Below, one piece after another: positions 1 through 46,899 of a DNA stretch of 64,000 nt. The stretch is from positions 3,906,001 to 3,970,000 of the forward strand of contig CATNEN010000029.1 of the NCBI GenBank assembly GCA_950097015.1, in the 5' to 3' direction. The notes beneath the pieces are model-generated. The model was not told the origin of the DNA. It saw only the letters and a list, made by a program, of their open reading frames with translations, and did no database searches. The position numbers and the translations under genes were made by a program. The DNA comes from Macrostomum hystrix. Lineage: Eukaryota; Animalia; Platyhelminthes. Within the stretch, counting starts at the first letter, position 1; each line of letters opens with the position of its first letter.

Positions 1-1120
1 TCAGCTCAAGGATGTGCTTGGGCAGAGCATTTCGGCCACCACAGTCTGGCACAGTCGACTCAATGACCGTGTGGATGGCTTTTGTGATGAGCTCGACCTC
101 GGCGTCGATTTGCTGAGCACTCGATAGGCGAGTCGGCTGTTCAGGAAGAAGGGCTTCACTGATCTTCAGCCTGAACTGATCCCAGTCGGTTTTGGAAAAG
201 TTTTTCGGCTTAGCGGGACCTGCCCACTTTGCCGACTGAATGTTGAGGGTGAGGATGATTGGCAGGTGGTCGCTGTCCAGGTCGGGACCGACTGCAAAGT
301 CCTGCACAAAGGGCAGAAAGTCCTCCGTGGCCAGGCCGAGGTCCAAGACATTCCTGGAAGTGACGCCATTCTTGGTGGCGATTCTGGTGAACTGGCCAAC
401 TTGATTGAGGATGGTGGGCGAGGCCAGACCTTCAGAGAGCCAGTCGTACAGCTCATGGCCAGCCCTGTTGTTGCTGCTGTCACCGCCAAGGAAGCGGTGT
501 CTGGCATTGAGGTCGCCAAGGAGAACACTGCGTCTGCGCGAGACCAGGCTCTTGAGCAGGTTCAGGTTCAGGTGGTAAGGTGCCGGAGACCTGTACACCA
601 GAGCCAGATTAAAGTCGGCACCGTGGGAGTTGTCAGACAGGCAGACAGTGCAGGAGATGGCTTCATGGTTCACATTGTCGTAGTGCAAGCGAACATTTGT
701 GAGTTTCACGCGCGGTGAGTGAGCAAGGAGCAGGCCGCGTCTGACATGCGGAGTGTCGTACCGGATGATGGAGTAGCCAGGGATCTGGACCGTGTGCGAA
801 CTCTTGAGAATGGTTTCAGAGAAGAGAGCAATGTCTATCTCTTGACTAATGACCCATTGGGTGAGTTCTCTGCTTTTCGGGTGAAACCCTCTGCAGTTGA
901 GGTGCATAATTTTCAGACCCGTTGTCTGGGTAATAGGGTTCCCATTTAAATTGAGGAATTTACAGTTTTCTGGTTTAGCTGCCTGGGCCCACGACCACGG
1001 TGGCGGTGGAGGCCATGCCAGACACGTCCTGGAGGACAGCCCGCACAATGTCCTCAACCATTTTACTGGTCGATTCCACTGTGAGGAGCTCACCAGGCGG
1101 CCTGGACAGGGCCCGCACAA
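1..1120 (-). CDS. ORF2 of copy 1, N-terminal part (APE endonuclease), running off the window
   Basis: Same sequence as ORF2 in copy 4 (KIMHLNCRG, IALFSET, LLGDLNA, SDHLPI). First in-frame ATG at 907. Confidence 0.88.
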   Translation of the reverse strand, partial: MCGPCPGRLVSSSQWNRPVKWLRTLCGLSSRTCLAWPPPPPWSWAQAAKPENCKFLNLNGNPITQTTGLKIMHLNCRGFHPKSRELTQWVISQEIDIALFSETILKSSHTVQIPGYSIIRYDTPHVRRGLLLAHSPRVKLTNVRLHYDNVNHEAISCTVCLSDNSHGADFNLALVYRSPAPYHLNLNLLKSLVSRRRSVLLGDLNARHRFLGGDSSNNRAGHELYDWLSEGLASPTILNQVGQFTRIATKNGVTSRNVLDLGLATEDFLPFVQDFAVGPDLDSDHLPIILTLNIQSAKWAGPAKPKNFSKTDWDQFRLKISEALLPEQPTRLSSAQQIDAEVELITKAIHTVIESTVPDCGGRNALPKHILEL

Positions 1121-3743
1121 TCACCTGGGTCAGAGAGCGGGTGATCAGGGGCAACAGCATGCTCACCATCTGCTTCAAGTCAGTCTGCTGCTGCTGCTGT
1201 GGCTCACTGCCAGCGTCCAGGGAGGGTGCAGCCTCATTGGCGCTCGTGCACCTGGTGCTGACAGTCTCGGCAGCCGGTCGGCTCCTGGCATCATCGTTGC
1301 TGATGAACAGCGGCCGGATGGCGGCATTGACGGGCACGTTGCGGCGGCCTTGGCGCATCAGCCAGCCACTGTCCGAAGCGTCGGACACGTCGGCGGGCGC
1401 ACTCGAGGCAGGCGGAGCATCCGTAGCCGCGGCTTCCGCAGCTCGCGCCGCAGCAGCTTTGGCCTCAGCTGCCGCCTTCGTCGCCTTGGCGTGCTCCTCC
1501 TGCGCAACAGTGCAGGCTCGGCTGGTCGTGCGGTGCTGACCACCGCAGTTGGAGCATGTCGCCGGGCCTTCGTGCTGGCAGTCCTTCCAGGCATGCGAGC
1601 CGCCGCAGATTCGGCATCGCAGCTCCACCTGGCACTGAGCTGCACGGTGGCCGAACTGCTGGCAGCGCTGGCACTGCAGGGCGCGGACCGGCTCGTCGGT
1701 GCGGCTCTCTTCGCAGCTGAACTTCAGAAAGTCAGTGCAGATGCCTTCGCGAAGGCACTAGTCGAATGTCGCTCTCGACTTCGTAAAGATGCGCATGTAC
1801 CGGGTGGCCTGCCCGGATGCTCGCGCACGGATCCGATGCACACTCGTGATGTCGAGCTTCAGGGACTCGCGGAGCATGCTGGCGAATTCGGCTTCCGTGA
1901 AGGAAAACGGCACGTCGAGCGCCACAAAGGTGAGCAGTGGCTGCTGCCGTACTCTGTCAGCGCCAGTCCGGTTGTCCAGCGGCCGTGATCGTGCTGGTCG
2001 ACGCTCGACACGGTGTCCGAGGAGGCTGTCCTGACGCAGAGCACCGCCTAGGAAGACGTTGTAATCCCGCTCAGTGGCCGGGAATACTAGGTAGGCGGGC
2101 TGATTGGCCATTTCGGCTGTGTTGACGGCACGGGCATCGCCGGCAAAGTTGGCCTGCAGCCAGGTGATGAAGGCCACCAGCTTGCCCGCCGCGTTTCGGT
2201 GCACTTCAAAGACCACCGGTGGAATGGCAGCCTGGGGTCTTCGCAATGGAGCGCGGGCCGAAGCCACCTGCGCATAGGGCCGCGCTGTCGCAGCCTGGGT
2301 CGTTGAAGCAGCCGCCGCTGCCGCCGCCGCCGACGCCGCCGACGAACCCGTCACCGCGGTCGCCGACGCTGCCGCCGCACCAGCCGCCGCACCTCGGCCG
2401 CCGCCGCCACCTCGCGTGCCTCGCTGTCTGCCGCCGCCGCCACCGCGGCTGCCTCGCTGCTGACCGCCGCCGCCGCGCTGACCACGTGCGCCGCGCTGAC
2501 CGCCGCCGCCGCGCTCTGCCTGCTGGTCCTGGGGCTGGCCTGGGTTGCCTTGCCGGTCGCCGAAGGGACCGCAGTCCAGTGGCTGGCTGTAGGTTGGGTC
2601 GTCGGTCGCCGCCCTCTTGCGCCGCAGCTCCGGCTTGGTGACGCGGAACGTCAGTGAGATGCGGACGCCGGTCTGGGTGCGAACTGCAGGCACCTGATGC
2701 TGCAGCCGCTTTTGACAATTGCCTCCCATGAGGATCAGCGATCCCGGGAGCGTCTGAAATCGATGCGTGACGTTTCCGTCACGTCGACGCAACATAAAAG
2801 TGCGCTCAGCGCCGAACGACACTGTAGCGATGGTCGGCTTGTCGCCGAGCTCCTCCTCGTCATCCGCATGCCACGGAATCCGGTCCTCCGGCTCGGTGTA
2901 GAAGTTCACCAGAACGGAGTTGAACTTCGGGACCTCGAGCCCAGCATCGTCGTAAAGGAAGTCACGAATGTCTTCGATTACTGGATGCCAGGTTTGATTT
3001 TCCTTCAGCTCAACCCCGCTGTAGGTGTACGCCGGGCCGATCCAGAAGACACGGCGCTGCTCGTGCGGGCGATGACGGAAGGCGAGTGGGAGCACGTCTG
3101 CCATCAGGCGCTGGTATATTTGGTCAGCGACCTCGCCAAGAAAGTAGGGCGCGTAGACGATGGTGCAGTCGCCCGCGTAGGTCGTCTGCTGGCACTCGCT
3201 GAAGTCCGGCTCGTCAGGGAAGACGATCTGCGAGATGTCGGCGTCTGACTGTGCAGCGGTGGGCTTCGGAATTGTCGTCTGGGCAATAGCAGCCGACTCG
3301 GATGCCGTTGGCGCTGGCGCAGGTGCTGCCGCAGCCTCAGTCTGTTGAGCAGCCGTCTCGGCTGCCTCGGCTTCATCGACGGACATTCTGTCGGCCGTCT
3401 CGTTTGAGTCCGCAGTCGCGGGGGCCGCAGTCACTGCTGGAGGCTCGTCTTCGACGATGACAAGCCGACCTTCTGGTGGGCTGAACGAGCCGCGGTCTTG
3501 GGCGCTGTTGGCCGGTTCTGAGGTCTCGCTGGCCGGCGTCGGAGTCGACATCAGCGCTGTCGCGACCTTCGGCTGCAGCTTGCGACTGGCGTCTTCGGTG
3601 CGGCCGTACCGATGCTCGAGCGAGGGGCGGCCGTCGTGTTTTTTTGAAGTTGTGGCGCGATTCGCAGCCATATGGCGTGATTTCTCACTGGTGCAAGGTA
3701 AACAAAATAAGCAAAGGGGGCAGGTGGCACACAAAGAGCGCAC
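975..3743 (-). pseudogene. ORF1 of copy 1 (AlkB + gag-like CCHC) with an in-frame TAG at 1758-1760
   Basis: ORFs 1758..3743 and 975..1628 are in the same frame. Plus-strand 'cta' at 1758-1760 versus 'ctg' (CAG, Gln) in copies 2 and 4. Confidence 0.85.
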
Positions 3744-4636
3744 TCAAGGGAGGGGGTGGGGGACTGCTAGACTAAAACTAAAACTAAAACTACAAGTACA
3801 GGGGGAGAGAGAGACTGCAAAAATAAAACTAAAACAGGTGAGAATGAACAAGGAGCACTATAGGGAGCTTACTGGTGTACTTTAAAAGTACCCCCTTCTA
3901 GGAATGGGGTTGCACAAATCAAGGAACACTCAATGAATGTACCTCTCCACGGAAATCTTTGTTGTTAAAACGAATTCCCCGAAGTACTGGGGAGCGGGTC
4001 AGTTCCGAGGAACTCTGCCGCTATATTTTTTAATATATTTAATCGAAATTTATTTAAAATATACAAGCGTTTCGATCTGGATTATACGAATATTGAAAAT
4101 AAAAATAAAACAATAAAACAATAATTCAATATTTGGCAATATTTGGGCACGCATTGGAAGATAAAAGGGGAGAAATATACAAAGGGAATCCCGCACAAAG
4201 AAGGGATCTAATAAAAAAGGGAAATCTAAAAGGCATGCATGCAAGATATTTGTGAGCGCAATTAAAAGCAATTAGAATATTTGTTAGCAAAAATAGAAAA
4301 TAAAAATAGTAAATTAAACCATGAAATGCGAATTAAAAACATTTCTAGGCAATGCGGTACATATTACGTATAAAAATAGGCAAAAGTAAAAAGAAAGGAT
4401 TTATTTGGGAATTAAAAACTCTGGTGTGTAAAGAGCTAGCAGTTTATGAGCAAATAGCAACATAACAAAAGCAAAAAGTACTTTTTAGGCAATAAAATCA
4501 CGTTAATCAGTTTGAAAAAACGTAAAGAATATAATATCATAGCAGCTGAGCACTGCTCACCAGCCCTCTTGAGCTCAGGCAGCTATTTGAGTTTCATTTT
4601 GGTTTTTCTTTCAGGGCCATAGTTGTCAGAGACTGC

Positions 4637-7600
4637 TCAACCCTGGATTTGGAGTCGGTTCTGCCTGTTGATTTGTCCCCGCCTCAGGGTAGCCCACAGG
4701 ACATTGAGGATGGGGACTCGGCCCGGAGCGCGAGGAAGCTCCGGCTCGATGTGGAAGCCGTGCAGCCGAGCTGCTCTCATCTTGAGCAGCCAGGCCACAC
4801 CGAGCTGTTTGACTCTGGCTGAGAGCATTGGCATGCCGGCCATTTTGTGAAGGTACTCGGTGCTCAGGTAGGAAGGCACACCGTAGCAGATTCGCAGAGC
4901 AAGGTTCTGGATCTTTTGTAGCTTGATCTGGTTAGTGACGCAGATCAGAGTCAAGATTGGGGCGCCGTAGGTGAGAGCGCTCTCACCGTAGGCCCTGTAC
5001 AGCATCTTGAGAGTGACGCTGCTCAGTTTGGTGATCTTGGCGATGCGGCACAGGGACATGACAATGGCCCTGCACGTGTTCGCCATGTTGTCGACGTGTT
5101 TGTTCAAACAAAGATTGGCGTCGAGGAGGACACCTAGAAATTTCACTTCCTGACAGTAGGGGACCTCCGTCTGTCCCAGCTGCAGTTTGGGTCGCAAGTC
5201 GGCGCGAGCTGTCGGCTTGTAGTTGAAGGCGATGGCCTTGCTCTTGTCGGCATTCAGTCTGATGCCTTGCTTTCCGCACCACTCCCAGACTTGTCTGAGG
5301 TAGCTCTGGAGGCATGTCCGCAGACCAGCAAAGGTGTCTGCGGAGGCCCAGATGGCCATGTCGTCAGCAAATTGACTGCGTTTCACGTTTGGATTTTCAG
5401 GAATCGGCATTGTGCTGACGTACAGCAGGTACAGGAGAGGACTCAAGATGCCTCCCTGAGGTACGCCAGCTAGGATTCTGATCAGCTCACTGAGCGAGTT
5501 GTTGACTCGCACCTGGATGTACCTGTTCCTGAGGTAGTCAGACAGGATGCGCGTCAGCATCGAAGGAAAGCCAGCGTTGAGCATGCGGCTCCTGAGCATG
5601 TCGTGCCAGGCAGAGTCAAAGGCCGCCTCTACATCAAGGAAGACTGCAGCGGCCCTCTTTGCTTTGCACTTTGCGACCATCATGTCCTGCACCAGTCGGC
5701 ACAGGTTGTCGTAGGTGGAGTGGACTTTGCGATAAGCGCATTGGTCATCGCCAAGAATGTTCTTGTCCTCAAGGAATTTGGAGAGTCTCTTGGCAATCAG
5801 CTTCTCAAACACCTTGCCTAAGCAAGAGGTCAGGCTGATTGGCCTGTACGAGTTTGGATTGTCTGGCGGTTTGTCAGGCTTCGGGATCATTGTCACCACA
5901 GCTTTCTTCCAAGCGCTGGGGAAGATCCCTTGACTGAAGCAGGCGTTAAAGAGTCTGGTGATCCTGGTGATCGCCACGCCTTCAAGGCCGAGTTTGAGCA
6001 CTCGATTGGGAATCTTATCCAGCCCGGGTGCTCCATCAGGCTTGAGGTGCTCAAGCTCCCACACTGTGTCGGCTACAGTGAATGCGGCTTCAAGCGGGTG
6101 AGTGGCGATGCCATTGATGTCGGCCGGAATCGGATAGAAGGCGATGAACTTGGCCACTTCGGCCACCTCCTGTTTGAGCTGCTCGCAAGTGGATGGGACT
6201 GGGCGCATCTTTGAGTCCAGAGTGGCAGCGAGAAGGTTCGCTTTCTCCAGATCAGTGTGCGCACTGGTTTGACCCGAAGTGAGGGTTGGGATGGAGCTGG
6301 GCTTGAACTTGCCCATCAGCTTCCTGGTGTCATGCCAGAAGTTCTTGACCTTGCTGTTCTTGCTGTTCTCGACAACATTCTCACACAGCTTGGTGAGCTT
6401 GCCGCTCTGGAAGGAAGTGATTTCCCTTTTGATCCTGTTGGCCATTTGGTTGGCCAGCCTTTTAAAGTTTTCATCCCGGGTGCTGTTGAAGAGGCGTCTG
6501 AGTCGTCGGCGCTCTTTGATCAGCTCAAGGATGTGCTTGGGCAGAGCATTTCGGCCACCACAGTCTGGCACAGTCGACTCAATGACCGTGTGGATGGCCT
6601 TTGTGATGAGCTCGACCTCGGCGTCGATTTGCTGAGCACTCGATAGGCGAGTCGGCTGGTCAGGAAGAAGGGCTTCACTGATCTTCAGCCTGAACTGATC
6701 CCAGTCGGTTTTGGAAAAGTTTTTCGGCTTAGCGGGACCTGCCCACTTTGCCGAATGACTGTTGAGGGTGAGGATGATTGGCAGGTGGTCGCTGTCCAGG
6801 TCAGGACCGACTGCAAAGTCCTGCACAAAGGGCAGAAAGTCCTCCGTGGCCAGGCCGAGGTCCAAGACATTCCTGGAAGTGACGCCATTCTTGGTGGCGA
6901 TTCTGGTGAACTGGCCAACTTGATTGAGGATGGTGGGCGAGGTCGGACCTTCAGAGAGCCAGTCGTACAGCTCATGGCCAGCCCTGTTGTTGCTGCTGTC
7001 ACCGCCAAGGAAGCGATGTCTGGCATTGAGGTCGCCAAGGAGAACACTACGTCTGCGCGAGACCAGGCTCTTGAGCAGGTTCAGGTTCAGGTGGTAAGGT
7101 GCCGGAGACCTGTACACCAGAGCCAGATTAAAGTCGGCACCGTGAGAGTTGTCAGACAGGCTGACGGTGCAGGAGATGGCTTCATGGTTCACATTGTCGT
7201 AGTGCAAGCGAACATTTGTGAGTTTCACGCGCGGTGAGTGAGCAAGGAGCAGGCCGCGTCTGACATGCGGAGTGTCGTACCGGATGATGGAGTAGCCAGG
7301 GATCTGGACCGTGTGCGAACTCTTGAGAATGGTTTCAGAGAAGAGAGCAATGTCTATCTCTTGACTAATGACCCATTGGGTGAGTTCTCTGCTTTTCGGG
7401 TGAAACCCTCTGCAGTTGAGGTGCATAATTTTCAGACCCGTTGTCTGGGTATTAGGGTTCCCATTTAAATTGAGGAATTTACAGTTTTCTGGTTTAGCTG
7501 CCTGGGCCCACGACCACGGTGGCGGTGGAGGCCATGCCAGACACGTCCTGGAGGACAGCCCGCACAATGTCCTCAACCATTTTACTGGTCGATTCCACTG

Positions 7601-7639
7601 TGAGGAGCTCACCAGGCGGCCTGGACAGGGCCCGCACAA
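4637..7639 (-). CDS. ORF2: APE endonuclease + reverse transcriptase
   Basis: APE motifs: HLNCRG, FSET, VYRSP, GDLNA, VLDL, SDH. RT motifs: PGLDKI, YRPISLTSCLGKVFEK, FLDVEAAFDS, GVPQGGILSPLLY, QFADD, KFLGVLLD. No RNase H recognised. First ATG at 7426 (929 aa from there). Confidence 0.96.
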   Translation of the reverse strand: MCGPCPGRLVSSSQWNRPVKWLRTLCGLSSRTCLAWPPPPPWSWAQAAKPENCKFLNLNGNPNTQTTGLKIMHLNCRGFHPKSRELTQWVISQEIDIALFSETILKSSHTVQIPGYSIIRYDTPHVRRGLLLAHSPRVKLTNVRLHYDNVNHEAISCTVSLSDNSHGADFNLALVYRSPAPYHLNLNLLKSLVSRRRSVLLGDLNARHRFLGGDSSNNRAGHELYDWLSEGPTSPTILNQVGQFTRIATKNGVTSRNVLDLGLATEDFLPFVQDFAVGPDLDSDHLPIILTLNSHSAKWAGPAKPKNFSKTDWDQFRLKISEALLPDQPTRLSSAQQIDAEVELITKAIHTVIESTVPDCGGRNALPKHILELIKERRRLRRLFNSTRDENFKRLANQMANRIKREITSFQSGKLTKLCENVVENSKNSKVKNFWHDTRKLMGKFKPSSIPTLTSGQTSAHTDLEKANLLAATLDSKMRPVPSTCEQLKQEVAEVAKFIAFYPIPADINGIATHPLEAAFTVADTVWELEHLKPDGAPGLDKIPNRVLKLGLEGVAITRITRLFNACFSQGIFPSAWKKAVVTMIPKPDKPPDNPNSYRPISLTSCLGKVFEKLIAKRLSKFLEDKNILGDDQCAYRKVHSTYDNLCRLVQDMMVAKCKAKRAAAVFLDVEAAFDSAWHDMLRSRMLNAGFPSMLTRILSDYLRNRYIQVRVNNSLSELIRILAGVPQGGILSPLLYLLYVSTMPIPENPNVKRSQFADDMAIWASADTFAGLRTCLQSYLRQVWEWCGKQGIRLNADKSKAIAFNYKPTARADLRPKLQLGQTEVPYCQEVKFLGVLLDANLCLNKHVDNMANTCRAIVMSLCRIAKITKLSSVTLKMLYRAYGESALTYGAPILTLICVTNQIKLQKIQNLALRICYGVPSYLSTEYLHKMAGMPMLSARVKQLGVAWLLKMRAARLHGFHIEPELPRAPGRVPILNVLWATLRRGQINRQNRLQIQG

Positions 7640-10259
7640 TCACCTGGGTCAGAGAGCGGGTGATCAGGGGCAACAGCATGCTCACCATCTGCTTCAAGTC
7701 AGTCTGCTGCTGCTGCTGCTGCTGCTGTGGCTCACTGCCCGCGTCCAGGGAGGGTGCAGCCTCATTGGCGCTCGTGCACCTGGCGCTGACAGTCTCGGCA
7801 GCCGGTCGGCTCCTGGCATCATCGTTGCTGATGAACAGCGGCCGGATGGCGGCATTGACGGGCACGTTGCGGCGGCCTTGGCGCATCAGCCAGCCACTGT
7901 CCGAAGCGTCGGACATGTCGGCGGGCGCACTCGAGGCAGGCGGAGCATCCGTAGCCGCGGCTTCCGCAGCTCGCGCCGCAGCAGCTTTGGCCTCAGCTGC
8001 CGCCTTCGTCGCCTTGGCGTGCTCCTCCTGCGCAACAGTGCAGGCTCGGCTGGTCGTGCGGTGCTGACCACCGCAGTTGGAGCATGTCGCCGGGCCTTCG
8101 TGCTGGCAGTCCTTCCAGGCATGCGAGCCGCCGCAGATTCGGCATCGCAGCTCCGCCTGGCACTGGGCCGCACGGTGGCCAAACTGCTGGCAGCGCTGGC
8201 ACTGCAGGGCGCGGACCGGCTCGTCGGTGCGGCTCTCTTCGCAGCTGAACTTCAGAAAGTCAGTGCAGATGCCTTCGCGAAGGCACTGGTCGAATGTGGC
8301 TCTCGACTTCGTAAAGATGCGCATGTACCGGGTGGCCTGCCCGGATGTTCGCGCACGGATCCGATGCACACTAGTGATGTCGAGCTTCAAGGACTCGCGG
8401 AGCATGCTGGCGAATTCGGCCTCCGTGAAGGAAAACGGCACGTCGAGCGCTACAAAGGTGAGTAGTGGCTGCTGCCGTACTCTGTCAGCGCCAGTCCGGT
8501 TGTCCAGCGGCCGTGATCGTGCTGGTCGACGCTCGACACGGTGTCCGAGGAGGCTGTCCTGACGCAGAGCACCGCCTAGGAAGACGTTGTAATCCCGCTC
8601 AGTGGCCGGGAATACTAGGTAGGCGGGCTGATTGGCCATCTCGGCTGTGTTGACGGCACGGGCATCGCCGGCAAAGTTGGCCTGCAGCCAGGTGATGAAG
8701 GCCACCAGCTTGCCCGCCGCGTTTCGGTGCACTTCAAAGACCACCGGTGGAATGGCAGCCTGGGGTCTTCGCAATGGAGCGCGGGCCGAAGCCACCTGCG
8801 CATAGGGCCGCGCTGTCGCAGCCTGGGTCGTTGAAGCCGCCGCCGCCGACGCCGCCGACGAACCCGTCACCGCGTTCGCCGACGCTGCCGCCGCACCAGC
8901 CGCCGCACCTCGGCCGCCGCCGCCACCTCGCGTGCCTCGCTGTCTGCCGCCGCCGCCACCGCGGCTGCCTCGCTGCTGACCGCCGCCGCCGCGCTGACCA
9001 CCGCCGCCGCGCTGACCACCGCCGCCTCGCTCTGCCTGCTGGTCCTGGGGCTGGCCTGGGTTGCCTTGCCGGTCGCTGAAGGGACCGCAGTCCAGTGGCT
9101 GGCTGTAGGTCGGGTCGTCGGGCGCCACCCTCTTGCGCCGCAGCTCCGGTTTGGTGACGCGGAACGTCAGCGAAATGCGGACGCCGGTCTGAGTGCGAGC
9201 TGCAGGCACCTGATGCTGCAGCCGCTTCTGGCAGTTACCTCCCATGAGGATCAGCGATCCAGGGAGCGTCGGAAATCGGTGCGTGACGTTGCCGTCACGT
9301 CGACGCAACATAAAAGTGCGCTCAGCGCCAAACGACACTGTCGCTATAGTCGGCTTGTCGCCGAGCTCCTCCTCGTCATCCGCATGCCACGGAATCCGGT
9401 CTTCTGGCTCGGTGTAGAAGTTCACCAGAACGGAGTTGAACTTCGGGACCTCGAGCCCGGCATCGTCGTAAAGGAAGTCACGAATGTCTTCGATTACTGG
9501 ATGCCAGGTTTGATTTTCCTTCAGCTCAACCCCGCTGTAGGTGTACGCCGGGCCGATCCAGAAGACACGGCGCTGCTCGTGCGGGCGATGACGAAAGGCG
9601 AGTGGGAGCACGTCTGCCATCAGGCGCTGGTATATTTGGTCAGCGACCTCGCCAAGAAAGTAGGGCGCGTAGACGATGGTGCAGTCGCCCGCGTAGGTCG
9701 TCTGCTGGCACTCGCTGAAGTCCGGCTCGTCAGGGAAGACGATCTGCGAGATGTCGGCGTCTGACTGTGCAGCGGTGGGCTTCGGAATTGTCGTCTGGGC
9801 ACTCGCAGCCGACTCGGATGCTGTTGGCGCTGGCGCAGGTGCTGCCGCAGCCTCAGTCTGTTGAGCAGCCGTCTCGGCTGCCTCGGCTTCATCGACGGAC
9901 ATTCTGTCGGCCGTCTCGTTTGAGTCCGCAGTCGCGGGGGCCGCAGTCACTGCTGGAGGCTCGTCTTCGACGATGACAAGCCGACCTTCTGGTGGGCTGA
10001 ACGAGCCGCGGTCTTGGGCGCTGTTGGCCGGTTCTGAGGTCTCGCTGGCCGGCGTCGGAGTCGACATCAGCGCTGTCGCGACCTTCGGCTGCAGCTTGCG
10101 ACTGGCGTCTTCGGTGCGGCCGTACCGATGCTCGAGCGAGGGGCGGCCGTCGTGTTTTTTTGAAGTTGTGGCGCGATTCGCAGCCATATGGCGTGATTTC
10201 TCACTGGTGCAAGGTAAACAAAATAAGCAAAGGGGGCAGGTGGCACACAAAGAGCGCAC
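7494..10259 (-). CDS. ORF1: AlkB-family dioxygenase + RGG linker + gag-like region with 3 CCHC knuckles
   Basis: AlkB motifs at 9150-9692: YTYSG, FNSVLVNFY, WHADDE, TVSFGAERTF, GSLILMGG, QHQVP, RISLTFR. Knuckles: CQRCQQFGHRAAQC, CRICGGSHAWKDC, CSNCGGQHRTTSRAC. First ATG (MAANR) at 10187. Confidence 0.93.
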   Translation of the reverse strand: MRSLCATCPLCLFCLPCTSEKSRHMAANRATTSKKHDGRPSLEHRYGRTEDASRKLQPKVATALMSTPTPASETSEPANSAQDRGSFSPPEGRLVIVEDEPPAVTAAPATADSNETADRMSVDEAEAAETAAQQTEAAAAPAPAPTASESAASAQTTIPKPTAAQSDADISQIVFPDEPDFSECQQTTYAGDCTIVYAPYFLGEVADQIYQRLMADVLPLAFRHRPHEQRRVFWIGPAYTYSGVELKENQTWHPVIEDIRDFLYDDAGLEVPKFNSVLVNFYTEPEDRIPWHADDEEELGDKPTIATVSFGAERTFMLRRRDGNVTHRFPTLPGSLILMGGNCQKRLQHQVPAARTQTGVRISLTFRVTKPELRRKRVAPDDPTYSQPLDCGPFSDRQGNPGQPQDQQAERGGGGQRGGGGQRGGGGQQRGSRGGGGGRQRGTRGGGGGRGAAAGAAAASANAVTGSSAASAAAASTTQAATARPYAQVASARAPLRRPQAAIPPVVFEVHRNAAGKLVAFITWLQANFAGDARAVNTAEMANQPAYLVFPATERDYNVFLGGALRQDSLLGHRVERRPARSRPLDNRTGADRVRQQPLLTFVALDVPFSFTEAEFASMLRESLKLDITSVHRIRARTSGQATRYMRIFTKSRATFDQCLREGICTDFLKFSCEESRTDEPVRALQCQRCQQFGHRAAQCQAELRCRICGGSHAWKDCQHEGPATCSNCGGQHRTTSRACTVAQEEHAKATKAAAEAKAAAARAAEAAATDAPPASSAPADMSDASDSGWLMRQGRRNVPVNAAIRPLFISNDDARSRPAAETVSARCTSANEAAPSLDAGSEPQQQQQQQQTDLKQMVSMLLPLITRSLTQVIVRALSRPPGELLTVESTSKMVEDIVRAVLQDVSGMASTATVVVGPGS

Positions 10260-10904
10260 TCAAGGGAGGGGGTGGGGGACTGCTAGACTAAAACTAAAAC
10301 TAAAACTACAAGTACAGGGGGAGAGAGAGACTGCAAAAATAAAACTAAAACAGGTGAGAATGAACAAGGAGCACTATAGGGAGCTTACTGGTGTACTTTA
10401 AAAGTACCCCCTTCTAGGAATGGGGTTGCACAAATCAAGGAACACTCAATGAATGTACCTCTCCACGGAAATCTTTGTTGTTAAAACGAATTCCCCGAAG
10501 TACTGGGGAGCGGGTCAGTTCCGAGGAACTCTGCCGCTATATTTTTTAATATATTTAATCGAAATTTATTAAAAATTTACAGCGATTCGATTTAGATTAT
10601 TTTATACGGATATCAAACATAGAAAGTAGTAAATTATTAGTAAATAAGTAAATAAATGGATAATTAATATTTAAATAAAAATATTAAATAATATAAAAGC
10701 TTGCAGTTTGTGAGCAAAGAGCAAAAGTGACAATACAGCCATTAGTACTCATAGGCAATAAAATATATTAAGTCAGTAGGAAAAAAGCGTAAAAAATGGA
10801 ATATTTGAGCAGCTGAGCACTGCTCACCAGCCCTCTTAAGCTCAGGCAGCTATATTTGAGTTTCATTTTGGTTTTCTTTCAGGGCCATAGGTGTCAGAGA
10901 CTGC

Positions 10905-13848
10905 TCAACCCTGGATTTGGAGTCGGTTCTGCCTGTTGATTTGTCCCCGCCTCAGGGTAGCCCACAGGACATTGAGGATGGGGACACGGCCCGGAGCGCG
11001 AGGCAGCTCCGGCTCGATGTGGAAGCCGTGCAGCCGAGCTGCTCTCATCTTGAGCAGCCAGGCCACACCGAGCTGTTTGACTCTGGCCGAGAGCATTGGC
11101 ATGCCGGCCATTTTGTGAAGGTACTCGGTGCTCAGGTAGGAAGGCACACCGTAGCAGATTCGCAGAGCAAGGTTCTGGATCTTTTGTAGCTTGATCTGAT
11201 TGGTGACGCAGATCAGAGTCAAGATTGGGGCGCCGTAGGTGAGAGCGCTCTCACCGTAGGCCCTGTACAGCATTCTGAGAGTGACGCTGCTCAGTTTGGT
11301 GATCTTGGCGATGCGGCACAGGGACATGACAATGGCCCTGCACGTATTCGCCATGTTGTCGACGTGTTTATTCAGGCAAAGATTGGCGTCGAGGAGGACA
11401 CCTAGAAATTTTACTTCCTGACAGTAGGGGACCACCGTCTGTCCCCAGCTGCAGTTTGGGTCGCAAGTCGGCGCGAGCTGTCGGCTTGTAGTTAAAGGCG
11501 ATGGCCTTGCTCTTGTCGGCATTCAGTCTGATGCCTTGCTTTCCGCACCACTCCCAGACTTGTCTGAGGTAGCTCTGGAGGCATGTCCGCAGACCAGCAA
11601 AGGTGTCTGCGGAGGCCCAGATGGCCATGTCGTCAGCAAATTGACTGCGTTTCACGTTTGGATTCTCAGGAATCGGCATTTTGCTGACGTACAGCAGGTA
11701 CAGGAGAGGACTCAAGATGCCTCCCTGAGGTACGCCAGCTAGGATTCTGATCAGCTCACTGAGCGAGTTGTTGACTCGCACCTGGATGTACCTGTTCCTG
11801 AGGTAGTCAGACAGGATGCGCGTCAGCATTGAAGGAAAGCCAGCGTTGAGCATGCGGCTCCTGAGCATGTCGTGCCAGGCAGAGTCAAAGGCCGCCTCTA
11901 CATCAAGGAAGACTGCAGCGGCCCTCTTTGCTTTGCACTTTGCGACCATCATGTCCTGCACCAGTCGGCACAGGTTGTCGTAGGTGGAGTGGACTTTGCG
12001 ATAAGCGCATTGGTCATCGCCAAGAATGTTCTTGTCTTCAAGGTATTTGGAGAGTCTCTTGGCAATCAGCTTCTCAAACACCTTGCCTAAGCAAGAGGTC
12101 AGGCTGATTGGCCTGTACGAGTTTGGATTGTCTGGCGGTTTTTCAGGCTTCGGGATCATTGTCACCACAGCTTTCTTCCAAGCGCTGGGGAAGATCCCTT
12201 GACTGAAGCAGGCGTTAAAGAGTCTGGTGATCCTGGTGATCGCCACGCCTTCAAGGCCGAGTTTGAGCACTCGATTGGGAATCTTATCCAGCCCGGGTGC
12301 TCCATCAGGCTTGAGGTGCTCAAGCTCCCACACTGTGTCGGCTACAGTGAATGCGGCTTCAAGCGGGTGAGTGGCTATGCCATTGATGTCGGCCGGAATC
12401 GGATAGAAAGCGATGAACTTGGCCACTTCGGCCACCTCCTGTTTTAGCTGGTCACAAGTTGATGGGACTGGGCGCATCTTTGAGTCCATGAGTGGCAGCG
12501 AGAAGGTTCGCTTTCTCCAGATCAGTGTGCGCACTGGTTTGACCCGAAGTGAGGGTTGGAATGGAGCTGGGCTTGAACTTGCCCATCAGCTTCCTGGTGT
12601 CATGCCAGAAGTTCTTGACCTTGCTGTTCTTGCTGTTCTCGACAACATTCTCACACAGCTTGGTGAGCTTGCCGCTCTGGAAGGAAGTGATTTCCCTTTT
12701 GATCCTGTTGGCCATTTGGTTGGCCAGCCTTTTAAAGTTTTTATCCCCGGTGCTGTTGAAGAGGCGTCTGAGTCGTCGGCGCTCTTTGATCAGCTCAAGG
12801 ATGTGCTTGGGCAGAGCATATCGGCCACCACAGTCTGGCACAGTCGACTCAATGACCGTGTGGATGGCTTTTGTGATGAGCTCGACCTCGGCGTCGATTT
12901 GCTGAGCACTTGATAGGCGAGTCGGCTGGTCAGGAAGAAGGGCTTCACTAATTCTCAGCCTGAACTGATCCCAGTCGGTTTTGGAAAAGTTTTTCGGCTT
13001 AGCGGGACCTGCCCACTTTGCCGACAGAATGTTGAGGGTGAGGATGATTGGCAGGTGGTCGCTGTCCAGGTCAGGACCGACTGCAAAGTCCTGCACAAAG
13101 GGCAGAAAGTCCTCCGTGGCCAGGCCGAGGTCCAAGACATTCCTGGAAGTGACGCCATTCTTGGTGGCGATTCTGGTGAACTGGCCAACTTGATTGAGGA
13201 TGGTGGGCGAGGTCGGACCTTCAGAGAGCCAGTCGTACAGCTCATGGCCAGCCTTGTTGTTGCTGCTGTCACCGCCAAGGAAGCGGTGTCTGGCATTGAG
13301 GTCGCCAAGGAGAACACTGCGTCTGCGCGAGACCAGGCTCTTGAGCAGGTTCAGGTTCAGGTGGTAAGGTGCCGGAGACCTGTACACCAGAGCCAGATTA
13401 AAGTCGGCACCGTGAGAGTTGTCAGACAGGCTGACGGTGCAGGAGATGGCTTCATGGTTCACGTTGTCGTAGTGCAAGCGAACATTTGTGAGTTTGACGC
13501 GCGGTGAGTGAGCAAGGAAGCAAGGCCGCGTCTGACATGCGGAGTGTCGTATCGGATGATGGAGTAGCCAGGGATCTGGACCGTGTGCGAACTCTTGAGA
13601 ATGGTTTCAGAGAAGAGAGCAATGTCTATCTCTTGACTAATGACCCATTGGGTGAGTTCTCTGCTTTTCGGGTGAAACCCTCTGCAGTTGAGGTGCATAA
13701 TTTTCAGACCCGTTGTCTGGGTAATAGGGTTCCCATTTAAATTGAGGAATTTCCAGTTTTCTGGTTTAGCTGCCTGGGCCCACGACCCCGGAGGCGGTGG
13801 AGGCCATGCCAGACACGTCCTGGAGGACAGCCCGCACAATGTCCTCAA
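10905..13848 (-). pseudogene. ORF2 of copy 3, frameshifted (probably a consensus artefact)
   Basis: Pieces 13459..13848, 12452..13477, 11368..12534 and 10905..11522 together reconstitute APE-RT. Insertions at ~13517, ~13522, ~12488 and ~11442 sit at sites polymorphic among the copies. Confidence 0.8.
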
Positions 13849-16516
13849 CCATTTTACTGGTCGATTCTACCGTGAGGAGCTCACCAGGCGGTCTGGACAG
13901 GGCCCGCACAATCACCTGGGTCAGAGAGCGGGTGAACAGGGGCAACAGCATGCTCACCATCTGCTTCAAGTCAGTTTGCTGCTGCTTGCTGCTGTGGCTC
14001 ACTGCCAGCGTCCAGGGAGGGTGCAGCCTCATTGGCGCTCGTGCACCTGGCGCTGACAGTCTCGGCGGCCAGGTCGGCTCCTGGCATCATCGGTGCTGAT
14101 GAACAGCGGCCGGATGGCGGCATTGACGGGCACGTTGCGGCGGCCTTGGCGCATCAGCCAGCCACTGTCCGAAGCGTCGGACATGTCGGCGGGCGCACTC
14201 GAGGCAGGCGGGGCATCCGTAGGCGCGGCTTCCGCTGCTCGCGCCGCAGCAGCTTTGGCCTCAGCTGCCGCCTTCGTCGCCTTGGCGTGCTCCTCCTGCG
14301 CAACAGTGCAGGCTCGGCTAGTCGTGCGGTGCTGACCACCGCAGTTGGAGCATGTCGCCGGGCCTTCGTGCTGGCAGTCCTTCCAGGCATGCGAGCCGCC
14401 GCAGATTCGGCATCGCAGCTCCGCCTGGCACTGAGCTGCACGGTGGCCGAACTGCTGGCAGCGCTGGCACTGCAGGGCGCGGATCGGCTCATCAGTGCGG
14501 CTCTCCTCACAGGCGAACCTCACAAAGTCAGTGCAGATTCCGTCACGGAAGGCACTGCTCGACGGTTGCACGCGACCTCGTGAAGACGCGCATGTACCGG
14601 GTGGCCTGCCCTGATGCTCGCGCACGGATCCGATGCACACTGGTGATGTCGAGCTTCAAGGACTCGCGGAGCATGCTGGCGAATTCGGCCTCCGTGAAGG
14701 AAAACGGCACGTCGAGCGCTACAAAGGTGAGTAGTGGCTGCTGCCGTACTCTGTCAGCGCCAGTCCGGTTGTCCAGCGGCCGTGATCGTGCTGGTCGACG
14801 CTCGACACGGTGTCCGAGGAGGCTGTCCTGACGCAGAGCACCGCCTAGAAAGACGTTGTAATCCCGCTCAGTGGCCGGGAATACTAGGTAGGCGGGCTGA
14901 TTGGCCATTTCGGCTGTGTTGACGGCACGGGCATCGCCGGCAAAGTTGGCCTGCAGCCAGGTGATGAAGGCGACCAGCTTGCCCGCCGCGTTTCGGTGAA
15001 CTTCAAAGACCACCGGTGGAATGGCAGCCTGTGGTCTTCGCAATGGAGCGCGGGCCGAAGCCACCTGCGCATAGGGCCGCGCTGTCGCAGCCTGGGTCGT
15101 TGAAGCCGTCGCCGCTGCCGCTGCCGCCGACGCCGCCGACGAACCCGTCACCGCGTTCGCCGACGCTGCCGCCGCACCCGCCGCTGCACCCCGGCCGCCG
15201 CCGCCACCTCGCGTGCCTCGCTGTCTGCCGCCGCCGCCACCGCGGCTGCCTCGCTGCTGACCGCCGCCGCCGCTCTGACCACGTGCGCCGCGCTGACCAC
15301 CGCCGCCGCGCTCTGCCTGCTGGTCTTGGGGTTGGCCTGGGTTGCCTTGCCGGTCGCTGAAGGGACCGCAGTCCAGTGGCTGGCTGTAGGTTGGGTCGTC
15401 GGTCGCCGCCCTCTTGCGCCGCAGCTCCGGCTTGGTGACGCGGAATGTCAGCGAGATCCGGACGCCGGTCTGGGTGCGAACTGCAGGCACCTGATGCTGC
15501 AGCCGCTTCTGACAGTTGCCTCCCATCAGGATCAGCGACCCAGGAAGCGTCGGAAATTTGTGCGTGACGTTGCCGTCACGTCGACGCAACATAAAAGTGC
15601 GCTCAGCGCCGAAAGAAACTGTAGCGATGGTCGGCTTGTCACCGAGCTCCCCCTCGTCATCCGCATGCCACGGAATCCGGTCCTCTGGCTCGGTGTAGAA
15701 GTTCACCAGAACGGAGTTGAACTTCGGGACCTCGAGCCCAGCATCGTCGTAAAGGAAGTCACGAATGTCTTCGATTACGGGATGCCAGGTTTGGTTCTCC
15801 TTCAGCTCAACCCCGCTGTAGGTGTACGCCGGGCCGATCCAGAAGACACGGCGCTGCTCGTGCGGGCGATGACGGAAGGCGAGTGGGAGCACGTCTTCTA
15901 TCAGGCGCTGGTAGATCTGGTCGGCGACCTCGCCAAGAAAGTAGGGCGCATAGACGATGTTGCAGTCACCCGCGTAGCTCGTCTTCTGACACTCGCTGAA
16001 GTCCGGCTCGTCAGGGAAGACGATCTGCGAGATGTCGGCGTCTGACTGTGCAGCGGTGGCCTTCGGAATTGTCGTCTGGGCACTCGCAGCCGACTCGGAT
16101 GCTGTTGGCGCTGGCGCAGGTGCTGCCGCAGCCTCAGTCTGTTGAGCAACCGTCTCGGCTGCCTCGGCTTCATCAACGGACATTTCGTTTAATTCAGCGG
16201 TCGCGGGGGCCGCAGTCCCTGCTGGAGGCTCGTCTTCGACGATGACAAGCCGACCATCTGGCGGGCTGAGCGAGCCGCGGTCTTGGTCGCAGTTGGCCGG
16301 TTCTAAAATCTCGCTGGCCGGCATCGGAGTCGACATCAGCGCTGTCGCGACCTTCGGCTGTAGCTTGCGACTGGCATCCTCAGTGCGGCCGTACCGATGC
16401 TCGAGCGAGGGGCGGCCGTCGTGTTTTTTTGCAGTGGCGCTATTCGCAGCCATGTGGTGTGATTTCTCACTAGTGCAGTCTGGGTGAGCAAAATAAACAA
16501 AGGGGGTAGGTGGCAC
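13766..16516 (-). pseudogene. ORF1 of copy 3, frameshifted; AlkB domain (15431-15973) intact
   Basis: Pieces 14543..16516, 14029..14640 and 13766..14032. First ATG at 16453. Confidence 0.8.
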
Positions 16517-17409
16517 GCAAAGTGCGCACTCAATGGAGGGGGTGGGGTGACAACTAGACTAAAACAACAAGGACAGGGGGAGAGAAAAACATCAAAATAA
16601 AGCTAAAGCAGTTAAGAAAATACAAAGGACACTATAGGGAGCTTACTGGTGTACTTTAAAAGTACCCCCTTCTTGGAATGGGGTTGCACAAATCAAGGAA
16701 CACTCAATGAATGTACCTCTCCACGGAAATCTTTGTTGTTAAAACGAATTCCCCGAAGTACTGGGGAGCGGGTCAGTTCCGAGGAACTCTGCCGCTATAT
16801 TTTTTTAATATATTTAATCGAAATTTATTTAAAATATACAAGCGTTTCGATCTGGATTATACGAATATTGAAAATAAAAATAAAACAATAAAACAATAAT
16901 TCAATATTTGGCAATATTTGGGCACGCATTGGAAGATAAAAGGGGAGAAATATACAAAGGGAATCCCGCACAAAGAAGGGATCTAATAAAAAAGGGAAAT
17001 CTAAAAAGCATGCATGCAAGATATTTGTGAGCGCAATTAAAAGCAATTAGAATATTTGTTAACAAAAATAGAAAATAAAAATAGTAAATAAAACATGAAA
17101 TGCGAATTAAAAACATTTCTAGGCAATGCGGTACATATTACGTATAAAAATAGGCAAAAGTAAAAAGAAAGGATTTATTTGGGAATTAAAAACTCTGGTG
17201 TGTAAAGAGCTAGCAGTTTATGAGCAAATAGCAACATAACAAAAGCAAAAAGTACTTTTTAGGCAATAAAATCACGTTAATCAGTTGAAAAAACGTAAAG
17301 AATATAATATCATAGCAGCTGAGCACTGCTCACCAGCCCTCTTGAGCTCAGGCAGCTATTTGAGTTTCATTTTGGTTTTTCTTTCAGGGCCATAGTTGTC
17401 AGAGACTGC

Positions 17410-20400: not shown

Positions 20401-20413
20401 AGGGCCCGCACAA
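17410..20413 (-). pseudogene. ORF2 of copy 4 (APE-RT) with one frameshift near 19,140
   Basis: ORFs 19103..20413 and 17410..19248. Plus-strand 'gctgtttctc' versus 'gctgttctc' in the other copies (extra T in a T run; may be a sequencing error). Confidence 0.82.
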
Positions 20414-46864: not shown

Positions 46865-46899
46865 CACCCTCCTTGATCCGAATCCGAAACGGACGAACC

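What the first reader, a model, noticed from the sequence alone, without database searches (positions are those of the whole stretch)
7494..10259. LINE ORF1 protein carries a catalytically intact AlkB (ALKBH2/3-type) nucleic-acid demethylase domain
Seen: in every copy, ORF1 has an intronless, in-frame ~180-aa domain (2634-3176, 9150-9692, 15431-15973, 21927-22469, 28200-28742) with the full AlkB signature: YTYSG, NxxLxNxY, HxD (WHADDE), distal H (QHQVP) and RxxxxxR (RISLTFR). It lies upstream of a normal gag-like region with three CCHC knuckles. Known: ALKBH2/ALKBH3-type Fe(II)/2-oxoglutarate enzymes remove 1-methyladenine and 3-methylcytosine from DNA/RNA; m1A and m3C stall reverse transcriptases; some plant RNA viruses (Flexi-/Closteroviridae) carry AlkB in their replicase. 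The LINE ORF1 accessory domains I know (RRM, CCHC, PHD, esterase, coiled coil) do not include AlkB. Inference: ORF1p coats the element RNA in many copies, so the element may demethylate or repair its own RNA template or cDNA intermediate before or during target-primed reverse transcription, or erase host methyl marks. I cannot exclude that such elements are already in Repbase/Dfam.
Basis: partly seen in the sequence, partly recalled or inferred. Interest (0 to 1): 0.93.

Follow-up and report, generated by a model that had tools for sequence, protein, structure and literature searches.

The report
Jumping gene carrying a demethylase enzyme
A flatworm jumping gene (LINE) that inserts into U5 snRNA genes has a complete, selectively maintained ALKBH3-like nucleic-acid demethylase built into its RNA-coating protein, which suggests that methylated bases limit its copying; no activity has been measured.

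Summary
Window 1-29500 (minus strand) is a head-to-tail array of five ~6.3-6.5 kb LINE copies headed by a complete U5 snRNA gene. In every copy ORF1 holds an open AlkB domain:
- Pfam PF13532, E 1e-22.
- Human ALKBH3, E 4e-25.
- AlphaFold pLDDT 92.7, and TM 0.83 to ALKBH3 crystal structures.

The iron ligands (H292, D294, H349) and 2-oxoglutarate ligands (N280, Y282, R361, R367) are intact. Selection is purifying: dN/dS is 0.08-0.10 between subfamilies, and variable sites by codon position are 1/6/36.

Downstream of AlkB lie an RGG tract, two RRM-like domains and three CCHC knuckles, which is an ordinary ORF1 body. Four or five deeply diverged LINE lineages (32-42% AlkB identity, 41% ORF2 identity) share this build, and their ORF2s form one clade. 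ORF2 relatives at about 30% identity have ORF1 without AlkB.

The LINE AlkBs form their own clade, apart from the host ALKBH3 clade, so this is an old acquisition rather than a recent capture.

Function is inferred only: repair or demethylation of the element's own RNA or single-stranded DNA. I found no paper describing AlkB in a LINE. Precedents exist in plant RNA viruses and in an orchid Ty3/Gypsy element.

The scan found this before on other DNA of the same genome (s1-084965, s1-084969, s1-300409).

Verdict: a new variant of a known kind.

The parts
29430..29548 (-). Complete U5 snRNA gene at the head of the array. Its 3' part (29430-29500) is also the first 71 nt of LINE unit E.
   Evidence: Rfam RF00020, 76.2 bits, E 3.5e-11, model positions 1-117 of 117.
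23254..29500 (-). LINE unit E (subfamily 2). ORF1 is 26538-29282 (914 aa as listed) and ORF2 is 23681-26620; both are open.
16735..23253 (-). LINE unit D (subfamily 1). ORF1 20268-23036 is open; ORF2 is in two pieces.
10477..16734 (-). LINE unit C (subfamily 2). ORF1 and ORF2 are broken, but the AlkB stretch 15431-15973 is still open.
3961..10476 (-). LINE unit B (subfamily 1), the copy in the finding. Both ORFs are intact.
1..3960 (-). LINE unit A (subfamily 1), cut by the window start. Its AlkB stretch 2634-3176 is open.
10406..10476 (-). U5 3' part (from AAAGA, just after loop 1, to the U5 3' end) that begins unit B. Every unit begins with the same piece.
   Evidence: Its sequence variants follow the subfamily of the downstream unit.
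7494..10187 (-). ORF1 of unit B counted from the first ATG (897 aa). Residue numbers in this report follow the 921-aa ORF listed from 10259.
9135..9707 (-). AlkB (ALKBH3-like) Fe(II)/2-oxoglutarate dioxygenase domain, aa 185-375. Iron ligands are H292, D294 and H349. 2-oxoglutarate ligands are N280, Y282, R361 and R367.
   Evidence: Pfam E 1.1e-22. ALKBH3 E 4e-25. AF2 pLDDT 92.7. Foldseek TM 0.83. Invariant columns.
8907..9032 (-). Gly/Arg-rich RGG tract, aa 410-451.
   Evidence: Read directly from the translation.
8235..8744 (-). Two RRM-like beta-alpha-beta-beta-alpha-beta domains, aa 506-579 and 600-675.
   Evidence: AF2 pLDDT 79. Foldseek matches tandem-RRM proteins at E about 1e-6. The region aligns with ORF1 of LINEs that lack AlkB.
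8040..8201 (-). Three CCHC zinc knuckles, aa 687-740.
4637..7426 (-). ORF2 (929 aa from its ATG). It holds the apurinic-type endonuclease (about 6773-7426) and the reverse transcriptase (about 5129-5887).
   Evidence: Pfam RVT_1 E 1e-34, Exo_endo_phos_2 E 2e-11. ATG position.
3961..4030 (-). 3' terminal 70 nt of unit B, with two hairpins, ending ...GTTTTAACAAC at the junction with the next U5 3' part.
   Evidence: Fold z-score -2.9. The subfamily-2 version (23254-23323) keeps the same fold through a compensatory change.

Best explanation
SHOWN. This is a non-LTR retrotransposon (LINE) of a Macrostomum-type flatworm. Its ORF1 protein is built as: disordered N-terminus, ALKBH3-like AlkB dioxygenase, RGG tract, two RRM-like domains, three CCHC knuckles, C-terminal tail. 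ORF2 is an ordinary endonuclease plus reverse transcriptase. The AlkB domain has every residue needed to bind iron and 2-oxoglutarate. It is under strong purifying selection. It is retained in an old, diversified LINE clade whose ORF2s form one group. The element sits in U5 snRNA genes at one exact position just after loop 1. It carries the U5 3' part at its own 5' end, so each insertion leaves a whole U5 gene at the head of a growing array.

INFERRED. ORF1 proteins bind the RNA that encoded them. The fused enzyme is therefore delivered in many copies onto the element's own 6.3-kb RNA, and possibly onto the single-stranded DNA of the insertion intermediate. There it oxidatively removes N1-methyladenine and N3-methylcytosine, the ALKBH3/AlkB substrates that form only on unpaired bases and that stall reverse transcriptases. 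This raises the fraction of RNA copies that can be reverse-transcribed to full length. Plant-virus AlkB domains are thought to protect viral RNA genomes in the same way.
For: Domain identity:
- Pfam PF13532 E 1.1e-22.
- PDB sequence search: ALKBH3 E 3e-25, ALKBH2 E 1e-18.
- AF2 pLDDT 92.7, pTM 0.89.
- Foldseek: ALKBH3 TM 0.83, ALKBH2 TM 0.81. E. coli AlkB, ALKBH5, FTO and ALKBH9B are clearly lower.

Catalytic residues: invariant in 60 homologues, including all TE lineages.

Selection:
- dN/dS in AlkB is 0.08 (B vs E), 0.10 (D vs E) and 0.03 (B vs D).
- 36 of 43 variable sites are at third codon positions.

Architecture is shared by P0004, P0005, P0009, P0013 and the L011 ORF1, each with ORF2 or an APE domain downstream.

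Phylogeny:
- TE AlkBs form one clade (support 95).
- Their ORF2s form one clade (support 100).
- ORF2 relatives at about 30% identity have ORF1 without AlkB.

The RNA-binding body of ORF1 is supported.

Precedent: viral AlkBs demethylate RNA in vitro and prefer RNA over DNA (PMC2553587).

U5 context.
Against: - No enzymatic activity, substrate or expression was tested.
- Spontaneous m1A/m3C damage per 6-kb RNA is expected to be rare. The selective benefit of pure damage repair is therefore not obvious.
- ALKBH3-like enzymes also act on tRNA and on single-stranded DNA, so the true substrate could be something other than the element's RNA.
- The LINE clade could not be assigned against reference elements.
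Confidence: 0.6

Rival explanations
1. Counter-defence against enzymatic marks. The AlkB domain erases methyl marks (m1A, m3C, or m6A as reported for some ALKBH3 activities) that host methyltransferases place on the LINE RNA to mark it for decay, block its translation or block reverse transcription. This would be epitranscriptomic escape rather than repair of chemical damage.
For: - Long-term retention across a whole LINE clade fits a constant, host-imposed pressure better than rare chemical damage.
- The orchid Ty3/Gypsy AlkB protein is an active m6A RNA demethylase, and its authors propose this role for it (PMC9289625).
Against: - The domain is ALKBH2/3-type and is far from the m6A erasers: ALKBH5, FTO and ALKBH9B give TM 0.57-0.66 and 15-21% identity.
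- No data exist on RNA methylation in this animal.
Confidence: 0.2
2. DNA-side repair. The enzyme works on the single-stranded DNA exposed during target-primed reverse transcription (the displaced target strand and the first-strand cDNA), removing 1-meA or 3-meC that would block second-strand synthesis.
For: - ALKBH3 prefers single-stranded DNA and RNA. The best structural matches are ALKBH3 bound to ssDNA.
- ORF1p travels with the RNP to the target site (established LINE biology).
Against: - The single-stranded DNA intermediates are short-lived and small compared with the RNA.
- The fused RNA-binding modules (RGG, RRM, CCHC) point to RNA.
Confidence: 0.12
3. Leader or host-RNA processing. The domain acts on the snRNA-derived 5' leader of the co-transcript, or on host small RNAs (snRNA, tRNA), for example to make an snRNA-like transcript usable as mRNA and RT template.
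For: - This element carries a U5 3' part with the Sm-site region at its 5' end.
- Earlier scan notes report sister AlkB-LINEs at SL-RNA and U5 genes (s1-084969, s1-300409; not verified here for SL).
Against: - From my own knowledge, the known U5 modifications are 2'-O-methyls, pseudouridines and the trimethylguanosine cap. None is a known ALKBH3-type substrate.
- L001 and other AlkB-LINE contigs show no snRNA next to them.
Confidence: 0.05
4. Passenger or non-catalytic domain. The AlkB fold is kept only as a structural or RNA-binding module, or is a neutral relic of a captured host gene.
For: None beyond the lack of any activity data.
Against: - All iron and 2-oxoglutarate ligands are invariant across lineages that share only 32-42% identity.
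- dN/dS is 0.03-0.10.
- The domain is conserved about as well as ORF2 and better than the gag part: 32-42% vs 41% vs 30-33% identity.
Confidence: 0.03

Closest known systems
Human ALKBH3 (and ALKBH2), Fe(II)/2-oxoglutarate demethylases of 1-meA and 3-meC
   Same: - Same fold: TM 0.83 and 0.81.
- Same HxD...H and RxxxxxR motifs.
- 31-33% identity; sequence E 4e-25 (ALKBH3) and 1e-18 (ALKBH2).
- The TE clade falls next to the animal ALKBH3 clade with weak support, and the AU test does not reject joining them (p 0.27).
   Different: - It is not a free-standing host enzyme. It is an internal domain of a LINE ORF1 protein, followed by RGG, RRM and CCHC modules.
- It forms its own clade, apart from the animal ALKBH3 clade that includes Macrostomum proteins.
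AlkB domains in plant RNA-virus replicases (Flexiviridae, Closteroviridae; PMC2553587)
   Same: A selfish RNA-templated replicator carries its own AlkB. The proposed role is removal of methyl lesions from the replicator's RNA.
   Different: - Those are viruses with RNA-dependent RNA polymerases, and AlkB sits inside the replicase polyprotein.
- Here AlkB sits in the RNA-coating protein of a retrotransposon.
- Structural matches to viral AlkBs have only 16-28% identity, lower than to human ALKBH3.
Orchid Ty3/Gypsy LTR retrotransposons with an AlkB/2-ODD protein (PMC9289625)
   Same: A retrotransposon that has fixed an AlkB-family demethylase. Its protein binds RNA and is active in vitro.
   Different: - That is an LTR element, the domain is in a separate extra ORF, and the acquisition is recent and restricted to Phalaenopsis.
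- Its domain is of the m6A-eraser type.
- Here the element is a LINE, the domain is fused in ORF1, it is ALKBH3-type, and it is old and spread over a whole LINE clade.
LINE ORF1 proteins with RRM plus CCHC, and ORF1s with accessory domains (esterase, PHD) as recalled from the LINE literature
   Same: The body of this ORF1 is the usual two RRM-like domains plus three CCHC knuckles. It aligns with ORF1 of related LINEs that lack AlkB.
   Different: The accessory domain is a nucleic-acid demethylase. I found this described for no LINE.
Target-specific LINEs in multicopy RNA genes (R1/R2 in rDNA; Utopia and Keno in U2 snRNA genes, PMC4640811)
   Same: - The insertion site inside a multicopy small-RNA gene is fixed.
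- The 5' end carries target sequence, as expected from co-transcription and homology-assisted 5' joining.
   Different: - The target is U5 snRNA, just after loop 1.
- The element rebuilds a whole U5 gene at its head and stacks into head-to-tail arrays.
- It also carries AlkB.

Membership tests
AlkB family, ALKBH2/3 group (Fe(II)/2-oxoglutarate nucleic-acid demethylases) | Pfam 2OG-FeII_Oxy_2 profile match above the curated cut-off | tested here: met
   81.6 bits against a cut-off of 31.2, E 1.1e-22. The same holds in all five copies.
AlkB family, ALKBH2/3 group (Fe(II)/2-oxoglutarate nucleic-acid demethylases) | Double-stranded beta-helix fold with the N-terminal nucleotide-recognition extension | tested here: met
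   AF2 pLDDT 92.7. Foldseek TM 0.83 to ALKBH3 (8jnk) and 0.81 to ALKBH2 (3btx) over about 200 residues.
AlkB family, ALKBH2/3 group (Fe(II)/2-oxoglutarate nucleic-acid demethylases) | HxD...H iron triad, and the RxxxxxR plus N/Y 2-oxoglutarate ligands | tested here: met
   H292, D294, H349, R361, R367, N280 and Y282 are present. These columns are invariant in a 60-sequence alignment.
AlkB family, ALKBH2/3 group (Fe(II)/2-oxoglutarate nucleic-acid demethylases) | Closer to ALKBH3/2 than to ALKBH1, 5, 6, 8, FTO or bacterial AlkB | tested here: met
   Sequence E 4e-25 (ALKBH3) and 1e-18 (ALKBH2); the other groups are absent at E 1e-3. The structural ranking agrees. The tree places the domain next to the animal ALKBH3 clade with weak support.
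AlkB family, ALKBH2/3 group (Fe(II)/2-oxoglutarate nucleic-acid demethylases) | Oxidative demethylation of m1A or m3C in RNA or ssDNA | not testable with these tools
   Needs recombinant protein and methylated oligonucleotides.
Non-LTR retrotransposon (LINE) with APE-type endonuclease, Jockey/I/R1-like group | ORF2 with an N-terminal apurinic-type endonuclease followed by a reverse transcriptase | tested here: met
   Exo_endo_phos_2 E 2e-11, RVT_1 E 1e-34.
Non-LTR retrotransposon (LINE) with APE-type endonuclease, Jockey/I/R1-like group | ORF1 with RRM-like domain(s) and CCHC knuckles | tested here: met
   Two RRM-like folds and three CCHC knuckles. The region is homologous to a PRE_C2HC-containing ORF1 of a related LINE.
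Non-LTR retrotransposon (LINE) with APE-type endonuclease, Jockey/I/R1-like group | Placement in a named clade by RT phylogeny with reference elements | not tested
   No reference set (Repbase) was available. The only named distant hits are 'jockey' and 'X-element' automatic names.
Target-specific LINE of a multicopy RNA gene | All copies joined to the same nucleotide of the same RNA gene | tested here: met
   In this window, all five units begin with the same U5 3' part, and all four 3' ends seen here stop at ...AACAAC directly before the next one. A complete U5 gene heads the array. Other loci were not examined here. Earlier notes s1-300405 and s1-300409 report the same on another piece.
Viral AlkB domains / orchid Gypsy AlkB | Common descent with those domains | tested here: not met
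   Viral AlkBs share only 16-28% identity and rank below ALKBH3. ALKBH9B-type gives TM 0.62 and 21% identity. This is an analogy of role, not membership.

The most novel reading that the evidence does not exclude
AlkB-in-ORF1 defines a whole, old clade of flatworm LINEs, several of them tied to Sm-class small-RNA genes. A related AlkB ORF also sits directly upstream of a Penelope-like RT/GIY-YIG gene in another sample. Unrelated retroelements would then have converged on, or exchanged, a demethylase. That would mean base methylation of single-stranded RNA or DNA, possibly placed by the host as a defence, is a general and so far unrecognised barrier to reverse transcription in these animals.
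Probability: 0.2. Interest if true: 0.85.

Novelty: new variant of a known kind. Interest (0 to 1): 0.68.

Why it matters
LINE ORF1 proteins are regarded as RNA chaperones, and few carry an enzymatic accessory domain. A conserved demethylase fused to the protein that coats the template RNA would be direct genetic evidence that m1A/m3C-type base methylation limits reverse transcription in vivo. It links three separate cases (plant RNA viruses, an orchid LTR element, and now animal LINEs) in which selfish RNA-templated replicators acquired AlkB. It also gives a simple test system: wild type against an iron-ligand mutant. If the enzyme is active on long RNA, it could become a compact, RNA-tethered eraser for removing RT-blocking methylations.

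Tried and rejected
- **Reads:** No expression or 5'-end evidence was obtained.
- **Word-indexed protein searches:** the AlkB part found almost nothing. The exhaustive representative search was needed.
- **NCBIfam:** no hit.
- **snRNA next to other AlkB-LINE contigs:** Rfam found none, so snRNA targeting cannot be generalised to the whole clade.
- **Contigs of P0194, P0195 and P0211:** too short upstream to show whether their ORF1 has AlkB. The point of acquisition is therefore bracketed, not fixed.
- **Recent capture of the host ALKBH3:** rejected, because the TE domains form their own deep clade.
- **m6A-eraser type:** rejected by sequence and fold ranking.
- **Assembly chimera, or a LINE landing in a host ALKBH gene:** rejected. 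Five copies and several distant lineages have the same in-frame build.
- **Organism names of the Logan samples:** could not be obtained.
- **AU test for 'TE AlkBs one clade':** did not finish.
Full report
**What is there**

On the minus strand, window 1-29500 is a head-to-tail array of five copies of one non-LTR retrotransposon. The copies run from E at the head to A, which is cut by the window start. Unit lengths are 6247-6519 bp.

The copies fall into two subfamilies. E and C are 97.7% identical. D, B and A are 98.4-99.8% identical. Between the subfamilies identity is 93-96%.

Copy B is the one in the finding, and both of its ORFs are intact:
- ORF1 is 7494-10259 as listed. The first ATG is at 10187.
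- ORF2 is 4637-7426. It has the apurinic-type endonuclease and the reverse transcriptase (Pfam E 2e-11 and 1e-34).

**Check of the observation**

Each ORF1 piece matches Pfam PF13532 at E about 1e-22, about 82 bits against a cut-off of 31.2.

Against solved structures by sequence, the best matches are human ALKBH3 (E 3e-25 to 4e-25) and then ALKBH2 (about 1e-18). No other AlkB group reaches E 1e-3.

An AlphaFold model built on a 60-sequence alignment is confident: pLDDT 92.7, pTM 0.89. It superposes as follows:

| Match | TM-score | Identity |
|---|---|---|
| ALKBH3-ssDNA crystal structures | 0.83 | 31-33% |
| ALKBH2 | 0.81 | about 30% |
| E. coli AlkB, ALKBH6, ALKBH8, ALKBH5, FTO, plant ALKBH9B | 0.57-0.71 | 15-23% |

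In the alignment the iron ligands (H292, D294, H349 in ORF1 numbering) and the 2-oxoglutarate ligands (N280, Y282, R361, R367) are invariant across all 60 sequences. The acidic residue at H+4 of the HxDxE motif (E296) is also nearly invariant. From my own knowledge, this residue contacts the exocyclic amine of m1A/m3C in AlkB (D135) and ALKBH2 (E175).

**Selection**

| Comparison | Synonymous differences | Non-synonymous differences | dN/dS in AlkB |
|---|---|---|---|
| B vs E | 28.5 | 8.5 | 0.08 |
| D vs E | 23.5 | 8.5 | 0.10 |
| B vs D | 20 | 2 | 0.03 |

The value for ORF1 as a whole between subfamilies is about 0.20. Across the five copies, variable sites in the domain fall 1/6/36 on codon positions 1/2/3. 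This confirms the first-stage note s1-366108.

**The rest of ORF1**

After AlkB comes a 42-residue RGG tract at aa 410-451. The region aa 480-770 aligns with ORF1 of other AlkB lineages. It also aligns with ORF1 of related LINEs that have no AlkB.

The AlphaFold model of this region (pLDDT 79) shows two beta-alpha-beta-beta-alpha-beta domains. They match tandem-RRM proteins at Foldseek E about 1e-6. Three CCHC knuckles follow. The AlkB domain is an N-terminal addition to an ordinary RNA-binding ORF1 protein.

**Distribution and age**

An exhaustive search of 1.84 billion representative proteins gave these best hits:
- Macrostomum lignano hypothetical proteins, 81-86% identical.
- P0004 (757 aa), P0005 (962 aa), P0009 (892 aa) and P0013 (843 aa), from Logan assemblies.
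- A further M. lignano group: P0006, P0007, P0010 and P0157.

The four long proteins have AlkB at the N-terminal side and three CCHC knuckles further on. Their contigs continue into an endonuclease or a full APE-RT ORF2.

L011 carries a nearer relative. Its AlkB is 60% identical, its gag part 49% and its ORF2 57%.

The window's ORF2 and that of L001 are 41% identical. Their AlkB domains are about 34% identical and their gag parts 30%. AlkB is therefore conserved about as well as ORF2 and better than the gag part.

In an AlkB tree the TE-borne domains form one clade (SH-like support 95). In an ORF2 tree the ORF2s of all AlkB-bearing LINEs form one clade (support 100). ORF2 relatives at about 30% identity (L012, L013) have 471-507-aa ORF1s without AlkB. 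The simplest reading is one old acquisition that has been kept ever since.

**Origin of the domain**

Animal ALKBH3 orthologues form their own clade. It includes a crinoid, a nemertean, a bird and a mammal, together with Macrostomum proteins P0175 and P0091.

With a site-heterogeneous model the TE clade is sister to that clade, but with weak support (68). An AU test does not reject uniting them (p 0.27). An ancient capture of an ALKBH3-type gene is plausible but not shown. A recent capture of the host gene is excluded.

Viral AlkBs are less similar than human ALKBH3, at 16-28% identity.

**Genomic context**

A complete U5 snRNA gene (Rfam 76 bits, full length) lies directly upstream of copy E. 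Every unit begins with the same 71-nt U5 3' part, starting at AAAGA just after loop 1. Every unit ends at ...GTTTTAACAAC.

At the two informative junctions (E|D and D|C), the variant of the U5 3' part matches the subfamily of the downstream unit, not the upstream one. The U5 3' part therefore travels with the LINE 5' end. This is expected if the element is transcribed through from the U5 promoter and its cDNA is joined to the target by homology. Each insertion into the head U5 then rebuilds a whole U5 gene and lengthens the array. This agrees with earlier notes s1-300405 and s1-300409 on another piece of the genome.

The last 70 nt of the element fold into two hairpins in both subfamilies, with a compensatory change.

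**How it most likely works**

The steps that are shown:
- the architecture;
- the intact active site;
- the purifying selection;
- retention across the clade;
- the RNA-binding modules.

The steps that are inferred:
- ORF1p binds its own RNA in cis (general LINE biology).
- It thereby brings many copies of an ALKBH3-like enzyme onto the template.
- The enzyme removes m1A and m3C, lesions or marks that arise on unpaired bases and stall reverse transcriptase.
- It may do the same on the single-stranded DNA of the insertion intermediate.

The closest functional precedent is the AlkB domain of plant RNA viruses. Those domains demethylate RNA in vitro and prefer RNA over DNA (PMC2553587). The orchid Ty3/Gypsy AlkB is an active m6A demethylase, and its authors propose that it counters epitranscriptomic control (PMC9289625). 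The mark-erasure rival cannot be excluded here, although the domain type argues for m1A/m3C-type substrates.

**Novelty**

Full-text searches found no paper that describes AlkB in a LINE or a Penelope-like element. The searches combined AlkB with non-LTR/ORF1, with the Pfam name, with LINE/retrotransposon, with Penelope and with Repbase. A large AlkB survey does not mention retroelements. Repbase and Dfam could not be queried.

The scan itself has already reported the same architecture on other DNA of this genome (s1-084965, s1-084969, s1-300409).

I class it as a new variant of a known kind: a LINE with a new enzymatic accessory domain. The logic has precedents in viruses and in one LTR element.

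**Limits**

Expression and transcript starts are therefore untested. I worked beside those places and sent none of their letters to any search tool afterwards.
- Run and organism names were coded. The host is called a Macrostomum-type flatworm on the strength of the nearest public proteins and the earlier notes.
- The trees are FastTree or quick IQ-TREE searches, and deep nodes are weak.

Noticed in passing
window 29430-29548 (-) and unit starts at 29500, 23253, 16734, 10476, 3960: A complete U5 snRNA gene heads the array. Each LINE unit starts with the same 71-nt U5 3' part, whose variants follow the downstream unit. The element therefore seems to carry part of its target and to rebuild a whole U5 gene at each insertion.
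   Followed up: partly
L003 (Logan SRR19430222), 2120-5158 and 5266-7398: A 1012-aa ORF with an AlkB domain falls inside the TE AlkB clade with weak support. It lies directly upstream, on the same strand, of an RT plus GIY-YIG ORF of the Penelope-like family (atlas score 0.97 to DUF8422/HTH_animal/RVT_1/GIY-YIG clusters). This is a possible second retroelement class with AlkB. It rests on a single contig.
   Followed up: partly
window 3961-4030 (-) and 23254-23323 (-): The last 70 nt of the element fold into two hairpins (z -2.9 and -2.6). The two subfamilies keep the first hairpin through a C-G to U-A change. This may be the handle that the reverse transcriptase recognises.
   Followed up: partly
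window units B, C, D: The copies are mosaics. B and D differ at dS 0.16 in AlkB but only 0.007 in the N-terminal part. Copy C (subfamily 2) ends with the subfamily-1 version of the terminal 70 nt. This points to recombination, gene conversion or template switching among copies.
   Followed up: partly
L001 4346-4717; also L002, L006, L007: Two of the other AlkB-LINE lineages have a conserved 123-124-aa ORF with no Pfam match between ORF1 and ORF2. The window's element has none.
   Followed up: no
window 30749-54626: A long stretch is packed with minisatellites. Examples are 18 bp x76 at 30749-32123, 20 bp x88 at 41063-42832, 33 bp x64 at 43494-45624 and 15 bp x73 at 46887-48012. GC skew changes strongly between blocks.
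   Followed up: no
window 55392-57944 (-): An 850-aa GC-rich ORF is made of low-complexity sequence (poly-Q, poly-A) with one AT-hook-like KRKRGRPKGSKNR motif. It has no Pfam match and is probably a host gene or exon.
   Followed up: no
window 38130-38199 (-): A borderline Rfam tRNA match (29.2 bits against a cut-off of 29) that ARAGORN does not call.
   Followed up: no
P0175 (490 aa), P0091/P0176 (511-526 aa), Macrostomum lignano: The host-type ALKBH3-clade proteins of Macrostomum are about twice as long as vertebrate ALKBH3. Their extensions of 200-300 aa have no Pfam match.
   Followed up: no
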